A stretch of DNA of 64,000 bases from Amoeboaphelidium protococcarum X5 (lineage: Eukaryota; Fungi; Aphelidiomycota): the NCBI GenBank assembly GCA_023515725.1, contig JALDTO010000098.1:1018164-1082163 (forward strand), written 5' to 3'. A program made the position numbers and the translations under genes. Below the pieces are notes generated by a model. That model did not search any database. It was given only the letters and a program-made list of their open reading frames with translations, and had not been told where the DNA came from. The first letter of the stretch is position 1. Every line of letters starts with the position of its first letter. Positions 4,404 to 54,239 of the stretch are shown in pieces.

Positions 4404-5115
4404 TGCTGTGATCTCCAATATTTTTCTATTTTATTAGCAGAGAGAATGATCAATACAGCCGTGATCTAAATTTGACAAATTTTCAAAAGGTTGAAAGCGC
4501 CTTATCGAACGGCCATCAAAAGGGGTTTCCAGCAAACAAACCATCTCTCGCCTTTCTACCCAATAGAACGTATTGAGTGTTGTGAGTTTCACTGCAAGAT
4601 GCCGTATATAATCCAGTCGCGTTATTATACTTATAATTAGAACACATAATTTAATAAATATTCTAAAGCCTGCATATATAGGTGGTGAAATATAAAGAAT
4701 AAGTCCAGATTCATGAACTACTCTAAATGCGGTAAAATTTGGGGACATCACAAGGTTAATCGTGCTAATTGTACATGCCGTAATTATCATTAAGGGACTA
4801 CTCTGTCTTGAGCATATTTTAATCACGTACTATTATAGTCTTTTTTAAATTTTACAACTTGTATCTTTTAACTAAAATATATGTGATACCAAATTTAGAT
4901 GCCAAGTTTCTATTCTTGGCGCCATGTGCCTATTTTTGGCTTACGAGTTAGACTCACCTCAAATGATCACATAGCTTCACACAGCCTTCTTCCTGCTCAC
5001 ACATTGAAGAGAATATTCCACAGTTAACTCTCCTCTTCTCATTTTGATTATTATTATTATTGAATATCAGTAATTAATTGAAAACCAAGTATTATACCGA
5101 TAAAAAGAACAGTGT

Positions 5116-39073: not shown

Positions 39074-39928
39074 ATGTAGTCGTCATAAGATTCAGATTTT
39101 GAAGAATTACATTGTGAAGATTTAGAGGACCGCGCAAGTATCAGTAGTATATCTCGCGATGAATAAATAGGGAATAAGAGTCAAGACTAGGAGTAAGATG
39201 ATAATGATGATAAGACTTGTAGAATATGCTTCGGTGGTAGTGATGATATACCGACTCTTGGGCGATTTCTAAGTCCATGCAAGTGTAAAGGATCTATGAA
39301 GTATGTTCATTTAGAGTGCTTACAACAATGGCGTGCAACTAGTCCAAATGCTTATTATTATAAATGCCCATAATGCTAGTATAACTACAGGCTCAGTAGG
39401 ATTAATGCTTTTAAAATGCTCACTCATGAACTAACATTCACGGTCATCACGTTGATTATATTTTTCATTATCGTAATACTCGCTGGATTCGTCAGTAAAT
39501 GGTTCATGTCGATGCTTCTATCAGCATTTATAGATGCTGACGTGTAGACTATTATTCTAAAGGAAGACGGTGATCGCATGTAATAAAAGTAAACTTTGGC
39601 TATTCGACTCGGTGATGATAGTGCAGACTAACTAATGCTAGATACCAACTCTTGGACGTATCACCTCCTATCAGGAACAACTCTGATCGGTCTTTTATCT
39701 TTTGCCGGAATTGGAATAATTGGAAATTTCAACTTTCGACTTGGTGGGAATAATTTTGGAGGAAACGTGGATAGATCTGCTTCATTAATCATATTGATCG
39801 TTGTCGTTCTTATCGGCGTGTTGAGAAGCTTTTTGTTCATTTACAGAAATGTGAAACGACGCGTCAAAGCATATGGAATTTTTGCGATGGAACAAGCAGT
39901 TCTAGACGTACCTGAAGATGTAGACTGA
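39074..39928 (+). CDS. RING-CH (MARCH-type) membrane E3 ubiquitin ligase
   Basis: CRICF...FLSPCKCKGSMKYVHLECLQQW...CPQCQY followed by about 3 TM helices. Confidence 0.88.
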
Positions 39929-40170: not shown

Positions 40171-41640
40171 ATGTCTGGCAAAATGGGACTATTTGACCTC
40201 CCGCTGGAATTACTAAACTCCATTATGGGCCATTTGGATATGAAGGACTTGGCGCGTCTGCAGATGGTCAACACCAGCGCGTATCATTACATTATGATGA
40301 ACCGCCAATTTACGATGTACAACACGTCTAAATTCTTCACTTTGTATTATAAGCATCGTCTATTTGCAATGTTCTTGTTCCCTTTTGTTCATCCTCGATT
40401 CTAGCTGATGGCTGTAGATGATAATTCCTAAGGCGAAGATGATGACCAGACTATGATAGTCCTGGATCAGTCGGACGAGAAGCTGCCTAATGATTGTACA
40501 ACTGGTAACACCGCACTACACATTGCTGCATCCAATGGTCAATTGAATGTCATCGATAAGATGCTTGAGATGGAGCGGGATGGTATGTATGATATCTTTG
40601 ATTTTCCTGACACCGCTTATAATCAAGATGCGCTCAAGTATCTGAAATTAACGGATCATAATCGCGATTGTGCTTTGACTGATTTACTAAATGACGAGCC
40701 AAATACCCCCTTGCATTACATTAGTATTTTACCAAATGATGAAGATAGTGCATAGTCTGTTCTAAATGCTGCAGTGTTCTTGATCAGATCTGGAGCTGAT
40801 CTGTGGAAAAAAGGTCGAGCTGGTAACACTTGTCTGGCAGAAGCTGCCTAGCACGGCCAACTTGAGATGGTCAAGCTGTTCATTGATGCGTTTAAAGCAC
40901 TTTATAACGGCCATGATGACCTGACACTTTACATCAACGAGTACAATGATTATCACGAGAATGCAGTGATTATGGCTGCAAGATCGAGCCCCGAGGTCTT
41001 GGAGTTGCTTCTCCAGAATGGAGGAGATCCCAACAGTATGCGTCGCGGTTATCCTATCCTTTCTATCGCCGCATCAAGATTCTGTCTTGATCGTCGTGAT
41101 CCTCTTAATATTGCCCTCTATCATCGTTAAATAACCATGCGTTGGTCCATTCCCGTTCCTCATCTGAATCTTTATGACTTTGTACCAGAGAATATCCCCG
41201 TCAATCGCTTTATTCTGGTGATGAAATTACTGCTTCAATATGGTGCAGACGCATCCTTGGCTGAAAATTCCACAGGAATGAAGCCAATGCATATTGCCTC
41301 AATGTGGGGAGTCACTGAGGCTATTGAAATTCTCTTGAAGAGTGGCAACATCAACCCAAATGAAGAGCTTAATGAATTGAACGGCTGGCTCCCTGTCCAT
41401 TACGTTTGTCGCTTGGGTCATATCGACTCTCTCCAGTCTCTAATTTTGAACGGCGCACATGCCTGGGATGGAGATAGCATTTAAAATCAAGGCAATGAGA
41501 ATCCACAGGTCTCTTCCCTCGCCCGCGTGAATGTCCCTGCACCATTGGATATTTTGTACATTGATGCAATCAAGGCTAATATCCGCGACTTGATCTCCCA
41601 TCGTCGATCGTCTTCCTCATCTCGCCGTCTATCTCAATGA
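40171..41640 (+). CDS. F-box plus ankyrin-repeat protein
   Basis: LFDLPLELLNSIMGHLDMKDLARLQMVN (F-box); GNTALHIAASNG, GNTCLAEAA, GMKPMHIASMWG, GWLPVHYVCRLGH; 490 codons. Confidence 0.85.
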
Positions 41641-50524: not shown

Positions 50525-53269
50525 TCAATGGTAACCAGTATAATAAAACTGAGACAATTGTTGATCCTTCACCATTACTTGATGCTGCGCGGTGGAGATC
50601 TTGTACATGAGACGATGATTAGTAGGATAGAGAGTGCAGTCAATTTTCCTAACAAGCAGCAGCGGTAGGCTAAATGACGTGTTGGAGTCCAGTTCATTCA
50701 TTTGAATCGAGGCAAGTTATGATGGGAATCCTCTAGGAGTTTTATCAGACACATTACCACGAAGCATCGACTGAGGATCAATTGATGTCACAGCATTGGC
50801 ATTGTCACCCCTTTGACCAGCTTGCATAATTAGAGATTATAAATGAAGATTAGGTACATTTTAAGCCAGATTCTCTAGCCATTAGCCACGGTGAACACAG
50901 TCAGAGATAGTCGGTACAACTACAATCAAGCGAAGCTTAACTTCTAACGCAGGCTATTGTAACGCAATACTATTATCAGCCAGCAGAGACACTAATGGAA
51001 CGACAGTCAAATTATCAGTAGTGACAGAGTACTCAGCATGTAAAGTATTGCATTGAACATTGCCCAGGTATAACGCAAAATCACACAACCCAAGAGCTTC
51101 CTTGACGCTCATATTACGACGCTTAGATATCTCATACAGTAAAAGGGCGAAGCTATACGCATCAAATTTAATATCAAATACAGCTATTGTCCTTCCACCA
51201 CGAACACCACTAGCAACTTGATTAAGCGACGTGAATTCCATAAACTGCATATCATAACCTTAAATCTATGCCACAGGACTGAAAGGAAGCTACATAGCCG
51301 AGGATGATAACTACTGATACCAGCTATACTGAACCTGTTTAACATTAACTATAGTCCAAGTAGAGATTTCTGTAATTGCATTGCCTTTAGAGTAAACCGC
51401 GGTGGCCTCGCCACTATCGATATTGATAGAAAGGTAATAGCCGGGTCTATCTGCAAACTCAAAAGACAAATGTTGCAATTGAGTCAGAGGAGCAGGTACA
51501 GCTGTGTCTACATCGGTGCTACCATGAGTTTATGCTGCAGCTCTGCCTGATTTACTTACATCAGCTGTTCGCACTATCAACCGAGGTGATCTGAAATCAG
51601 GATTAGTGCTGCAGATACGAACAATCTAACCATCATAGATGACTCGTTCTTTATTATCCTCAAATGAATGAGAACCACTTATCTGAAGCTAGAAGGGATG
51701 CCAAGCAACATTCTTACCAACCAATACTCGTCGCCCTTCTGTGGCATTGAACTCTAACGCTAGACAACGCGTAGAAATGTTCTGGTTCTTAACGCGATTA
51801 AACAGCGCAATCGCAGAACCAGCAACGATAATGTCCGGTCCAAATGCCGCCTGGCTTGTGAGAGGAGACAACGGTTTCTTTGCCAATTTGGTTGAACTGA
51901 ATTTTCTCTTGGACGGCTTAGAGATAAGACTCATTGGCTGCGATTGGAAAGTCCCCATGTGACCTTATTTCTAATCTGATAATCTAAAATTGAGAACAAA
52001 ATCCTTCTTTTGCTATTTTGCCACTAGTTATGGACCCAAAATCTGACCAACATGCTTTCTAACGTCCTACTCTTCCTAATTTATGCCCATATTGAGTTGA
52101 CTGACATCGTTCATGTGCATATTCCGAAAGACTGCCAGTACGCTTGGCTCATCAGGTATCTACAGATCCATCTGATGAAGTAAAAGAGATGGCGATCCTC
52201 CACAACTGTCGGCATGTAACTGGCCGGTGTGATGCGGAGAAGTTGTCACTCTGGGAACCTCTTTAGCACCTTACTCCTCTCCAGCTGCTTTAGATCCGCC
52301 ATTATCAGCATTATCATTCACGCTACGTAAAAGTTATGAGGACATGCTGATCATTGGAGGTGGACAAAAGAAGCGCTTCTCAGTTCCATAAGACTTTTAA
52401 GCTATACAAGGGGTCATCACGATAACTTTGCATGTCTTGCGATGCCCCATATCAAGGCAGTAATCATCAACCACTTTCTACTAATCAGAATGCCAGAGCT
52501 TAACGCCAGATTCTTCCAATCTACAAATCACAGCGCGCGATTTTAAAAGAAACTCGTGCAATTCATGGTTAATTGAATTTTGGGTGGAAGAAGCAATAGC
52601 ATCCCTAATAGAAACTTGAACTTGAGCACCTAAATTAGGATCCAACACGAGAGCAGACTGATCATTGGACGGTGCTCTCTCCAATTCTTAAACACTTTTA
52701 CCACGAAGGTCCGATTTTGCAGCATTGATGGGGTCACAATTCGAGTTCAGTGCCAGACGAGAACCAGCAGCAGATTCAACAGTGCTGGTGGATTCGTAGC
52801 ATTACGGAGATCTAGAGGATAGAGACCGATTCTGACTATCGCTATACAGATTCACAGCAGCATTAGAGGGCGTGACACCCGTGGCAACTCTTTTATTGCT
52901 GTTATACAAAATCGCCAGATCATCGTTGGAACTTTGAATCAAGCGATGAGGTCTCTTGTTGATGAGCGAAGAACTCTCGTTAGCCCCACTTCTATCCTAG
53001 ACGTTCAAAACTGGCGCAGAGATGGATTGTGGAATCGACGGTATAAATTGATCATGTACAGAAGCTTCCTGCCCCTGTCCAATGCTATTACCACCATAAT
53101 AAGGGAACTCCCCCGTAAACCATGTACTTGAGTCGTTGGATGGATATGCGGCGTCAAAACTGTCCGGGCCTAATATCCCTTCACTCTGGTCAAACAGCTT
53201 CTATTGTTCCAGAATATTCTTCAAAATATCATTGATGTCTGTATTATAAGGATCATTATTATTTGTCAT
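50525..53269 (-). CDS. CSL-family (RBP-J/Su(H)/LAG-1, fungal Cbf11/12) transcription factor
   Basis: 915-codon intronless frame. NTD IAQKSYGTEKRFFCPPP (Q=TAA 52397-52399); GTFQSQPMSLISKPSKRK; BTD IVAGSAIALFNRVKNQNISTRCL; CTD LPLLLVRKIDCTLYPT. Confidence 0.92.
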
Positions 53270-53363
53270 TGTCAGCATCTAATATATATATATATGATTG
53301 AATTATAATATACTATTGCAATAATTGTGTATGAGTCTACTGTACAATTGTATTTCAGATCAC

Positions 53364-53383
53364 CGTGGGAATGAGCGTGAGAA
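53364..53383 (+). promoter_or_regulatory. Two tandem CSL consensus binding sites upstream of the CSL gene
   Basis: CGTGGGAA at 53364-53371 and CGTGAGAA at 53376-53383, 95-114 bp upstream of the CSL ATG (53269). Confidence 0.7.
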
Positions 53384-54239
53384 AATTTCTCAAAACTCTT
53401 TGCGACTACGCCACATGTGTTTAGTTCCAACTCAGCTGATTTGGGTTCCCCCGTTCCAGCCATAAACTGCCTGATAATTATTTTTGATCTGCTTATTTCT
53501 GGTATAAAGTATCAATATTTTGTATGACCATTAAATAGCAATAGTTATTATTATTCTTTGAGTGTGCTCGTTAATGCTATCGAAGGTCGTGGTGACCAAT
53601 TTTCACTGATTTTGGAATGGAGGCTTAGTGCATAGTTGATGATTTTTATCAATTGATTTCACTTTAGCGTGTGGTATAAACAATTTATGGATTATGAACA
53701 TAACGTACTGTAAATTAATAATGTACATGGCAGTTTTGCTATGGGTCCGCTCTACTTCGTCTTTAACAGAGCTCGCAAGACATTGAGTCAAACTATGAAA
53801 AGTTCTGCATTCAAGAAAGTCTATCCGCTCTAAGTTTCTTCCGGTTAAAGTTGAACGTAGATAAAAATGTTCAGTTACGCCGATAGTAAAGCCAACTCTT
53901 CCTCACTGCAGTAGGAATAACATCGTACGACACTTTTCGCAAAAATATATCTTTTAAGCACGTTTGTGCACCGAATGATCCCTAAGAAATCGAGATCGAT
54001 TGATGATCAAGTTCCAGCCAAAACCACTTGACCGACTCATATACAAATGAGCCCGATCAAGCGAGTCAAAGTGTAGATATGTTTTTATAAACGGTAGTAG
54101 TAGCATTGAGCACTCAGAATCGCGCGTGGTGATCTTGAACAGACAAATTCTTTCAAAGCGCGTTCTAAGACAACCGTTTTAGCTTTTTACACCTCCGCGT
54201 CAACTGCACGAAAAACCAGCTAAAATAAACAACTGTAAG

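What the first reader, a model, noticed from the sequence alone, without database searches (positions are those of the whole stretch)
53364..53383. Candidate CSL autoregulatory circuit: two perfect tandem CSL sites in the CSL gene's own promoter
Seen: CGTGGGAA-tgag-CGTGAGAA, head-to-tail with a 12-bp period, about 100 bp upstream of the CSL ATG. I saw no other such pair in the window, only isolated cores. Known: CGTG(G/A)GAA is the RBP-J/Su(H)/Cbf11 consensus, and Drosophila Su(H) autoregulates. Inference: CSL sequence specificity and a feedback loop, or cross-regulation by a paralogue, operate here without Notch, using a tandem geometry unlike the inverted metazoan paired site. I know of no description of this in aphelids.
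Basis: partly seen in the sequence, partly recalled or inferred. Interest (0 to 1): 0.85.

Follow-up and report, generated by a model that had tools for sequence, protein, structure and literature searches.

The report
CSL self-binding sites in aphelid promoter
In an alga-parasitising relative of fungi, the gene for CSL (the DNA-binding partner of animal Notch) has CSL's own recognition sequence just upstream, and distant relatives keep it there too; this points to a Notch-free feedback loop of a kind already reported in fission yeast.

Summary
Confirmed. CGTGGGAA and CGTGAGAA lie 86-105 nt upstream of an intact 917-aa CSL gene (CSL-A) of Amoeboaphelidium protococcarum (TAA/TAG = Gln). This is not chance. 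The genome has 13 such direct pairs (0.55 expected): the two CSL-A homeologues and 11 LTR copies of two related Ty3/gypsy families. The sites sit in the longest identical block between the homeologous promoters. Three of four distant orthologues from unnamed, aphelid-like organisms carry YGTGGGAA 45-277 nt upstream, in the same orientation (p about 1e-4). The paralogue CSL-B has 8-9 CSL-type sites. The 12-bp tandem geometry is not conserved, so it is not a new paired-site class. Seventeen CSL loci from other fungi show no enrichment. Best reading: monomeric CSL sites through which CSL-A and/or CSL-B regulate CSL-A without Notch, probably by activation. No binding is shown. CSL autoregulation is known in fission yeast (Cbf12) and nematodes. 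This scan already noted the CSL-B cluster on other DNA of this genome. New here: conservation across aphelid-like lineages, and CSL site pairs in retrotransposon LTRs.

The parts
53364..53371 (+). Proximal CSL site CGTGGGAA (TTCCCACG on the CSL-A sense strand), -93 to -86 from the ATG
   Evidence: kept in homeologue; same orientation in orthologues L032, L033, L034
53376..53383 (+). Distal CSL site CGTGAGAA, -105 to -98 from the ATG
   Evidence: kept in homeologue
53359..53416 (.). 58-nt block identical in the homeologue on C249; longest identical run in 930 aligned intergenic columns (86.6% identical overall; 17.6% divergence at fourfold sites of the gene)
53387..53394 (-). Degenerate inverted site TTTGAGAA, 15 nt from the proximal site (SPS-like spacing). 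Judged incidental: changed in another strain by a 1-nt deletion at 53389 and A>T at 53392
50525..53278 (-). CSL-A gene, 917 aa, no intron needed, 28 TAA/TAG read as Gln; LAG1-DNAbind aa 285-462, beta-trefoil aa 523-621; F2/metazoan-like BTD motif
52367..52399 (-). Conserved N-terminal-domain motif QKSYGTEKRFF (aa 294-304)
51902..51925 (-). Conserved motif ISKPSKRK (aa 452-459)
51767..51802 (-). BTD motif FNR..Q..STR; Arg495 corresponds to mouse R218 / Cbf11 R318 / Cbf12 R644, whose mutation abolishes DNA binding
53279..53335 (-). Probable 5' leader. A contig of run X9 (depth pattern suggests RNA; kind not on record) ends at 53335, so the sites would lie about 30-50 nt upstream of the transcript end. 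Inference only: contigs cannot prove a start
40174..41640 (+). F-box/ankyrin gene 9 kb from CSL-A; its orthologue is the next gene after CSL-A in L031 and L034. Used as synteny support for orthology; a functional link is not shown

Best explanation
The two octamers are functional monomeric CSL response elements in the proximal promoter of CSL-A. CSL-A itself, possibly together with or in competition with the Cbf11-like paralogue CSL-B, binds them, so CSL level feeds back on CSL-A transcription without Notch. Activation is the likelier sign. The conserved feature is at least one GTGGGAA, reading TTCCCAC on the sense strand, close upstream of the gene; the second site adds occupancy and the 12-nt spacing is lineage-specific. 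Shown: the sites, their rarity, their conservation, an intact DNA-binding domain, and a site-rich paralogue promoter. Inferred: binding, which paralogue binds, the sign, and the transcript start.
For: Rarity. Homeologue footprint. Other strain: a contig spanning 53300-53423 has one substitution and two deletions; the deletions lie outside the sites and the substitution is most likely the A>T at 53392 (inferred). Orthologues: L032 TTCCCACA -47 and CGTGAGAA -37; L033 (also TAA/TAG = Gln) TTCCCACA -45; L034 TTCCCACG -277. P(3 or more of 4) = 1e-4, and GTGGGAA is the only 7-mer shared by four of five upstream regions. Orthology: tree clade 99 SH-aLRT, shared insertion, synteny. DNA-binding motifs and fold intact. 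CSL-B promoter: 3 YGTGRGAA plus 5-6 variant sites, eight of them in both homeologues. Precedent: Cbf12 binds its own promoter and autoactivates (PMC3516552); Cbf11 and Cbf12 activate a GTGGGAA reporter through the same arginine (PMC3598750). The LTR site lies just upstream of a TATA-like box in two divergent LTR families, which fits an activator.
Against: No binding or expression data. One orthologue (L031) has only a near miss, CGTGGGAC at -498. Five annotated fungal CSL genes and 12 Mucoromycota-type metagenome loci show no enrichment. In S. pombe, Cbf12 binding is weak (PMC3598750), and a DNA-binding-dead Cbf12 did not lower cbf12 mRNA (10.1101/2023.08.22.554308). CSL-A is divergent (about 20% identity to LAG-1 over the fold alignment, with insertions), so its specificity could have drifted. 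The orthologue organisms are unnamed and sit on long branches.
Confidence: 0.58

Rival explanations
1. Cross-regulation only. The Cbf11-like paralogue CSL-B is the real binder; it controls itself through its dense cluster and controls CSL-A through these two sites, while CSL-A binds weakly or elsewhere.
For: CSL-B has the Cbf11-type BTD motif (NRIN.Q.VRT; compared with the cbf11 primer in PMC3598750, translated by me) and far more sites. In S. pombe Cbf11 is the strong binder and Cbf12 the weak one. The OLE1-like desaturase promoter has a CGTGTGAA at about -85 in both homeologues, and ole1 is a Cbf11 target.
Against: CSL-A keeps all tested DNA-binding motifs and is of the class closer to animal CSL. 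No CSL-B orthologue could be found in the other aphelid-like data (blank, which is uninformative). The acetyl-CoA carboxylase-like promoter showed no proximal site (start codon uncertain).
Confidence: 0.27
2. Another factor reads TTCCCAC or GCGTGGG (for example an E2F-like, EGR-like or general proximal-promoter factor), and the match to the CSL consensus is coincidental.
For: The same word sits before the TATA-like box of LTRs and upstream of C1-THF synthase. The flank GGCGTG recurs in the LTRs and in the CSL-B promoter.
Against: Both G and A occur at the one position where CSL tolerates both. The word is not a general promoter element: 1 of 28 window genes and 2 of 15 family-selected genes have it. 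It recurs specifically at CSL genes of both classes.
Confidence: 0.1
3. Chance, or passive conservation of a core-promoter block.
For: A scan of many windows will meet rare pairs. The homeologues are close enough that 20 nt stay unchanged 2% of the time.
Against: Independent recurrence in three distant orthologues with no alignable flanks, and in the paralogue.
Confidence: 0.05

Closest known systems
S. pombe cbf12 positive autoregulation (Kwon et al. 2012, PMC3516552)
   Same: Notch-free fungal CSL with a long N-terminus, found at its own promoter; two paralogues in the genome.
   Different: In S. pombe no motif was recovered for Cbf12 and the mechanism is unresolved (10.1101/2023.08.22.554308). 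Here there are perfect sites conserved across lineages, but no binding data.
[quoted passage not shown]
   Same: Identical octamer; monomeric proximal site.
   Different: Cbf11 seems to use one site per promoter and needs Mga2. No Mga2-type TIG match was found here (inconclusive).
C. elegans lag-1 positive autoregulation (Luo et al. 2020, title seen in the reference list of PMC8289040) and Drosophila Su(H) autoregulatory enhancer (from memory, not checked)
   Same: A CSL gene carrying clustered CSL sites.
   Different: The lag-1 loop responds to LIN-12/Notch. Animal sites lie, from recall, in distal or intronic enhancers; here they are 2 sites in the proximal promoter of a unicellular organism.
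Su(H)/sequence-paired site (SPS), HES1 type (PMC7685452)
   Same: Two CSL sites close together in a promoter.
   Different: An SPS is head-to-head with a 15-17 nt spacer and needs Notch ankyrin dimers. This pair is head-to-tail with a 4-nt gap.

Membership tests
CSL transcription factor family | RHR-N (LAG1-DNAbind) plus beta-trefoil domain in the CSL fold | tested here: met
   PF09271 E=1e-19; PF09270 E=3e-5, just under the cut-off; phmmer to LAG-1 E=2.5e-19; Foldseek top 18 hits all CSL
CSL transcription factor family | Conserved DNA-binding motifs including the R218-equivalent arginine | tested here: met
   QKSYG.EKRFF, ISKPSK and FNR (Arg495) present (residue role)
CSL transcription factor family | Sequence-specific binding to GTG(G/A)GAA | not testable with these tools
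   needs EMSA or DAP-seq
Fungal class F2 (Cbf12-like) | Groups with F2 and is closer to metazoan class M than to F1 | tested here: inconclusive
   BTD motif is F2/M-like. The quick tree puts the aphelid-like clade in an open fork with chytrid and holozoan CSL; long branches and no named F1 reference in the set
CSL autoregulatory element | Consensus sites in the CSL gene's own regulatory DNA, above background and conserved | tested here: met
CSL autoregulatory element | The gene's own product occupies the sites and changes its transcription | not testable with these tools
   no ChIP, reporter or perturbation data
Su(H) paired site (SPS) | Head-to-head sites with a 15-17 nt spacer | tested here: not met
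   the perfect pair is head-to-tail; the degenerate inverted partner 15 nt away is altered in another strain
Notch-dependent CSL target | Notch receptor present in the genome | tested here: inconclusive
   PF06816 NOD blank, but no control rang; absence rests on the literature for fungi (PMC1973085)

The most novel reading that the evidence does not exclude
Aphelids run a full Notch-free CSL circuit with paired-site logic. Both CSL classes feed back on themselves, Ty3/gypsy LTRs have captured CSL as their activator, and the genome's only strict head-to-head pair has the exact 16-nt HES1 spacing upstream of C1-THF synthase. The linked F-box/ankyrin protein would serve as an ankyrin cofactor or degrader of CSL in place of the Notch intracellular domain.
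Probability: 0.07. Interest if true: 0.8.

Novelty: new member of a known kind. Interest (0 to 1): 0.42.

Why it matters
CSL predates Notch, and what it did before Notch is an open question studied almost only in S. pombe, where the Cbf12 feedback loop lacks a defined cis element. A perfect, conserved self-site in the sister group of fungi suggests that CSL specificity and feedback are old in that branch. It also gives exact probes for a binding test with both CSL classes. The LTR sites suggest a first non-viral mobile element that uses CSL; my one paper search found only a passing mention for human ERV-K. The concept of CSL autoregulation is not new, and the pattern was not seen in the other fungal CSL loci sampled.

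Tried and rejected
(1) Tandem 12-nt geometry as a new paired-site class: rejected, because spacing and orientation differ in every other case. (2) Hidden SPS at this locus with the degenerate third site: rejected, changed in another strain. (3) A general promoter word: rejected. (4) A regulon of site pairs: the relaxed search gave 35 hits against 9 control; apart from the CSL genes and LTRs most lie in reading frames, with 3-4 apparently intergenic. Back-to-back CGTGRGAA pairs: none. (5) A non-coding RNA in the intergenic region: no Rfam match. (6) GTGGGAA at 39744 as a site for the F-box/ankyrin gene: it lies inside the upstream RING gene's frame. (7) Pan-fungal conservation: not seen. (8) CSL-B orthologues: blank from a 110-aa piece, uninformative. 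(10) One search used wrong coordinates; corrected. (11) The careful tree did not finish; only the quick tree is cited.

Full report
Observation. Reading TAA/TAG as Gln, a minus-strand ORF runs from 53278 to 50525 (917 aa). It equals database protein P0001, whose 94%-identical homeologue is named as Amoeboaphelidium protococcarum. The sites lie 86-105 nt upstream of its ATG and read TTCYCACG on its sense strand. The protein is a CSL: Pfam LAG1-DNAbind and BTD, phmmer hits to LAG-1 and RBPJ, and a model whose 18 best structural matches are all CSL. It keeps QKSYG.EKRFF, ISKPSK and the arginine (Arg495) whose mutation abolishes binding in mouse RBP-J, Cbf11 and Cbf12.

More than chance. The genome holds 918 single CGTGRGAA sites, fewer than the reversed control, so 0.55 direct pairs within 30 nt are expected. 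Thirteen are found: this one, its homeologue on C249, and 11 LTR copies. The chance of two sites within 300 nt upstream of a chosen gene is 7e-5. Between homeologues the intergenic DNA is 86.6% identical and fourfold sites differ by 17.6%, but the sites lie in a 58-nt identical run, the longest in the region. In another strain's contigs the changes nearest the sites are at 53338, 53389 and 53392. I infer that the octamers are intact there, although part of that table was not shown. Of 28 roughly called genes in the window, only CSL-A has YGTGRGAA within 300 nt upstream.

Relatives. A profile search with a stop-free piece found five divergent relatives. Four of them (P0007 was not in the tree) form a clade with CSL-A (SH-aLRT 99, long branches), and all share an insertion in the N-terminal domain. 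Synteny supports orthology: the F-box/ankyrin gene next to CSL-A in L031 and L034 has its single orthologue 9 kb from CSL-A in both homeologues, and SDA1 from L031 is also in the window. L033 uses the same recoded stop codons. The organisms are unnamed; 'aphelid-like' is my inference. Upstream DNA was available for four. L032 has TTCCCACA at -47 and CGTGAGAA at -37 (back-to-back). L033 has TTCCCACA at -45. L034 has TTCCCACG at -277. L031 has only a near miss. P(3 or more of 4) is 1e-4, and in an unbiased count GTGGGAA is the only 7-mer common to four of the five upstream regions. What is conserved is therefore a GTGGGAA in one orientation near the gene, not the tandem spacing.

Paralogue. The genome has two CSL genes, each in two homeologues. 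CSL-B (509 aa, Cbf11-type BTD motif, ending after the beta-trefoil domain) has three YGTGRGAA and five or six variant sites (CGTGTGAA, AGTGGGAA) within 600 nt upstream; eight are present in both copies (P about 2e-9 for eight). The scan had already reported this cluster (s1-570540, s1-570553). Its existence makes cross-regulation a serious rival.

Other fungi. Five annotated fungal CSL genes (chytrid, Basidiobolus, Dacryopinax, Paraglomus, Mucor) had one YGTGRGAA in total within 2.5 kb upstream, at -2210; Basidiobolus has a single AGTGGGAA at -29. Twelve Mucoromycota-type metagenome loci had 2 sites against about 5.6 expected. All of these are F2-type, so F1 genes remain untested here. Some animal-type loci did show clusters (L092, L098, L100). 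One contig (L116, perhaps also L075) has a vertebrate-type RBPJ motif and may be human or mammalian; it was part of the batch scan and was left out of everything afterwards.

LTRs and one SPS-like element. The 11 other pairs are in the 5' (U3-like) part of LTRs of two related retrotransposon families with the RT-RNaseH-integrase order of Ty3/gypsy (observed only). The families are clearly diverged, yet both keep TTCCCACGCCT a few bases upstream of a TATA-like box, and each has a second site of its own. They may descend from one ancestral gain. Separately, the only head-to-head CGTGRGAA..TTCHCACG pair in the genome has a 16-nt spacer, the HES1 optimum (PMC7685452). It lies 80-110 nt upstream of a C1-THF synthase-like gene and is identical in both homeologues. 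About one such pair is expected by chance and 3 of 31 spacers would fit, so this is a lead only.

Mechanism. Shown: rare, conserved consensus sites in the proximal promoter; an intact DNA-binding domain; a paralogue with a site cluster. Inferred: CSL binds as monomers. If run X9 is RNA, as its uneven depth suggests, the CSL-A transcript contig ends at 53335, 30-50 nt from the sites, and the divergent neighbour's begins near 53830, so the sites more likely serve CSL-A (contigs cannot prove starts). Activation is the likelier sign, because Cbf11 and Cbf12 activate a GTGGGAA reporter (PMC3598750), Cbf12 autoactivates (PMC3516552), and the LTR site sits where an activator would. I put autoregulation including CSL-A at 0.58, CSL-B-only control at 0.27, another factor at 0.10 and chance at 0.05. 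Searches for Notch NOD and Mga2-type TIG domains were blank but inconclusive.

Comparison and novelty. It works like the cbf12 and lag-1 feedback loops. It is not an SPS. Cbf12 autoregulation is reported, though its mechanism is unresolved (10.1101/2023.08.22.554308). I found no paper on aphelid CSL in the library. This is a new member of a known kind, made somewhat more valuable by a clean cis footprint across an early lineage and by the LTR observation. Interest 0.42.

Method notes. The tools take no protein through a stop by reference here, so recoded genes were searched as stop-free pieces or through P0001. 

Noticed in passing
G000 C146:455859 and 460786, C206:124234 and 129160, C207:2379 and 7185, C192:698303 and 698873, C13:4312, C233:223440, C146:915223 (L006, L008-L017): LTRs of two related Ty3/gypsy-type families each carry two perfect CGTGRGAA sites (28 and 32 nt period); one site, just upstream of a TATA-like box, is shared between the families.
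   Followed up: partly
L029:1501-1532 (C98:13212) and L030 (C244:373346): The genome's only strict head-to-head CSL pair has the 16-nt HES1 spacer, lies 80-110 nt upstream of a C1-tetrahydrofolate synthase-like gene and is identical in both homeologues.
   Followed up: partly
L019:5057-5750 and L020:4878-5480: The CSL-B promoter carries 8-9 CSL-type sites, including four or five CGTGTGAA copies; CSL-B ends right after the beta-trefoil domain.
   Followed up: yes
window 40174-41640 (+); L031:6123-7697; L034:5009-6699: An F-box/ankyrin gene stays linked to CSL-A in three diverged genomes; SDA1 is also linked in two, so this may be plain microsynteny.
   Followed up: partly
L042 and L043, about 85 nt upstream of the ATG: The OLE1-like desaturase promoter has CGTGTGAA in both homeologues; ole1 is a Cbf11 target in S. 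pombe.
   Followed up: partly
L033 (SRR9661224 contig): A second, distant organism (GC 52%) reads TAA/TAG as Gln in its CSL-A orthologue; the database protein P0002 is only a fragment of a frame of more than 700 aa.
   Followed up: partly
window 53470-53480 versus L021 about 4890-5060: The C249 homeologue has an insertion of about 170 nt roughly 100 nt upstream of the sites; the same allele appears in a 2013 biofilm metagenome.
   Followed up: no
L059, L061, L068, L069: Further relaxed site pairs that appear to be intergenic (for example a 9-nt period in homeologues C136 and C214); candidate CSL targets.
   Followed up: no
window 53556-53739: Run X9 has a low-depth contig here, between two uncovered stretches of the divergent promoter; a weak transcript is possible. 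No Rfam match.
   Followed up: no
L116 (and perhaps L075): Vertebrate-type RBPJ sequence that may be human or mammalian; left out after the batch scan and not pursued.
   Followed up: no
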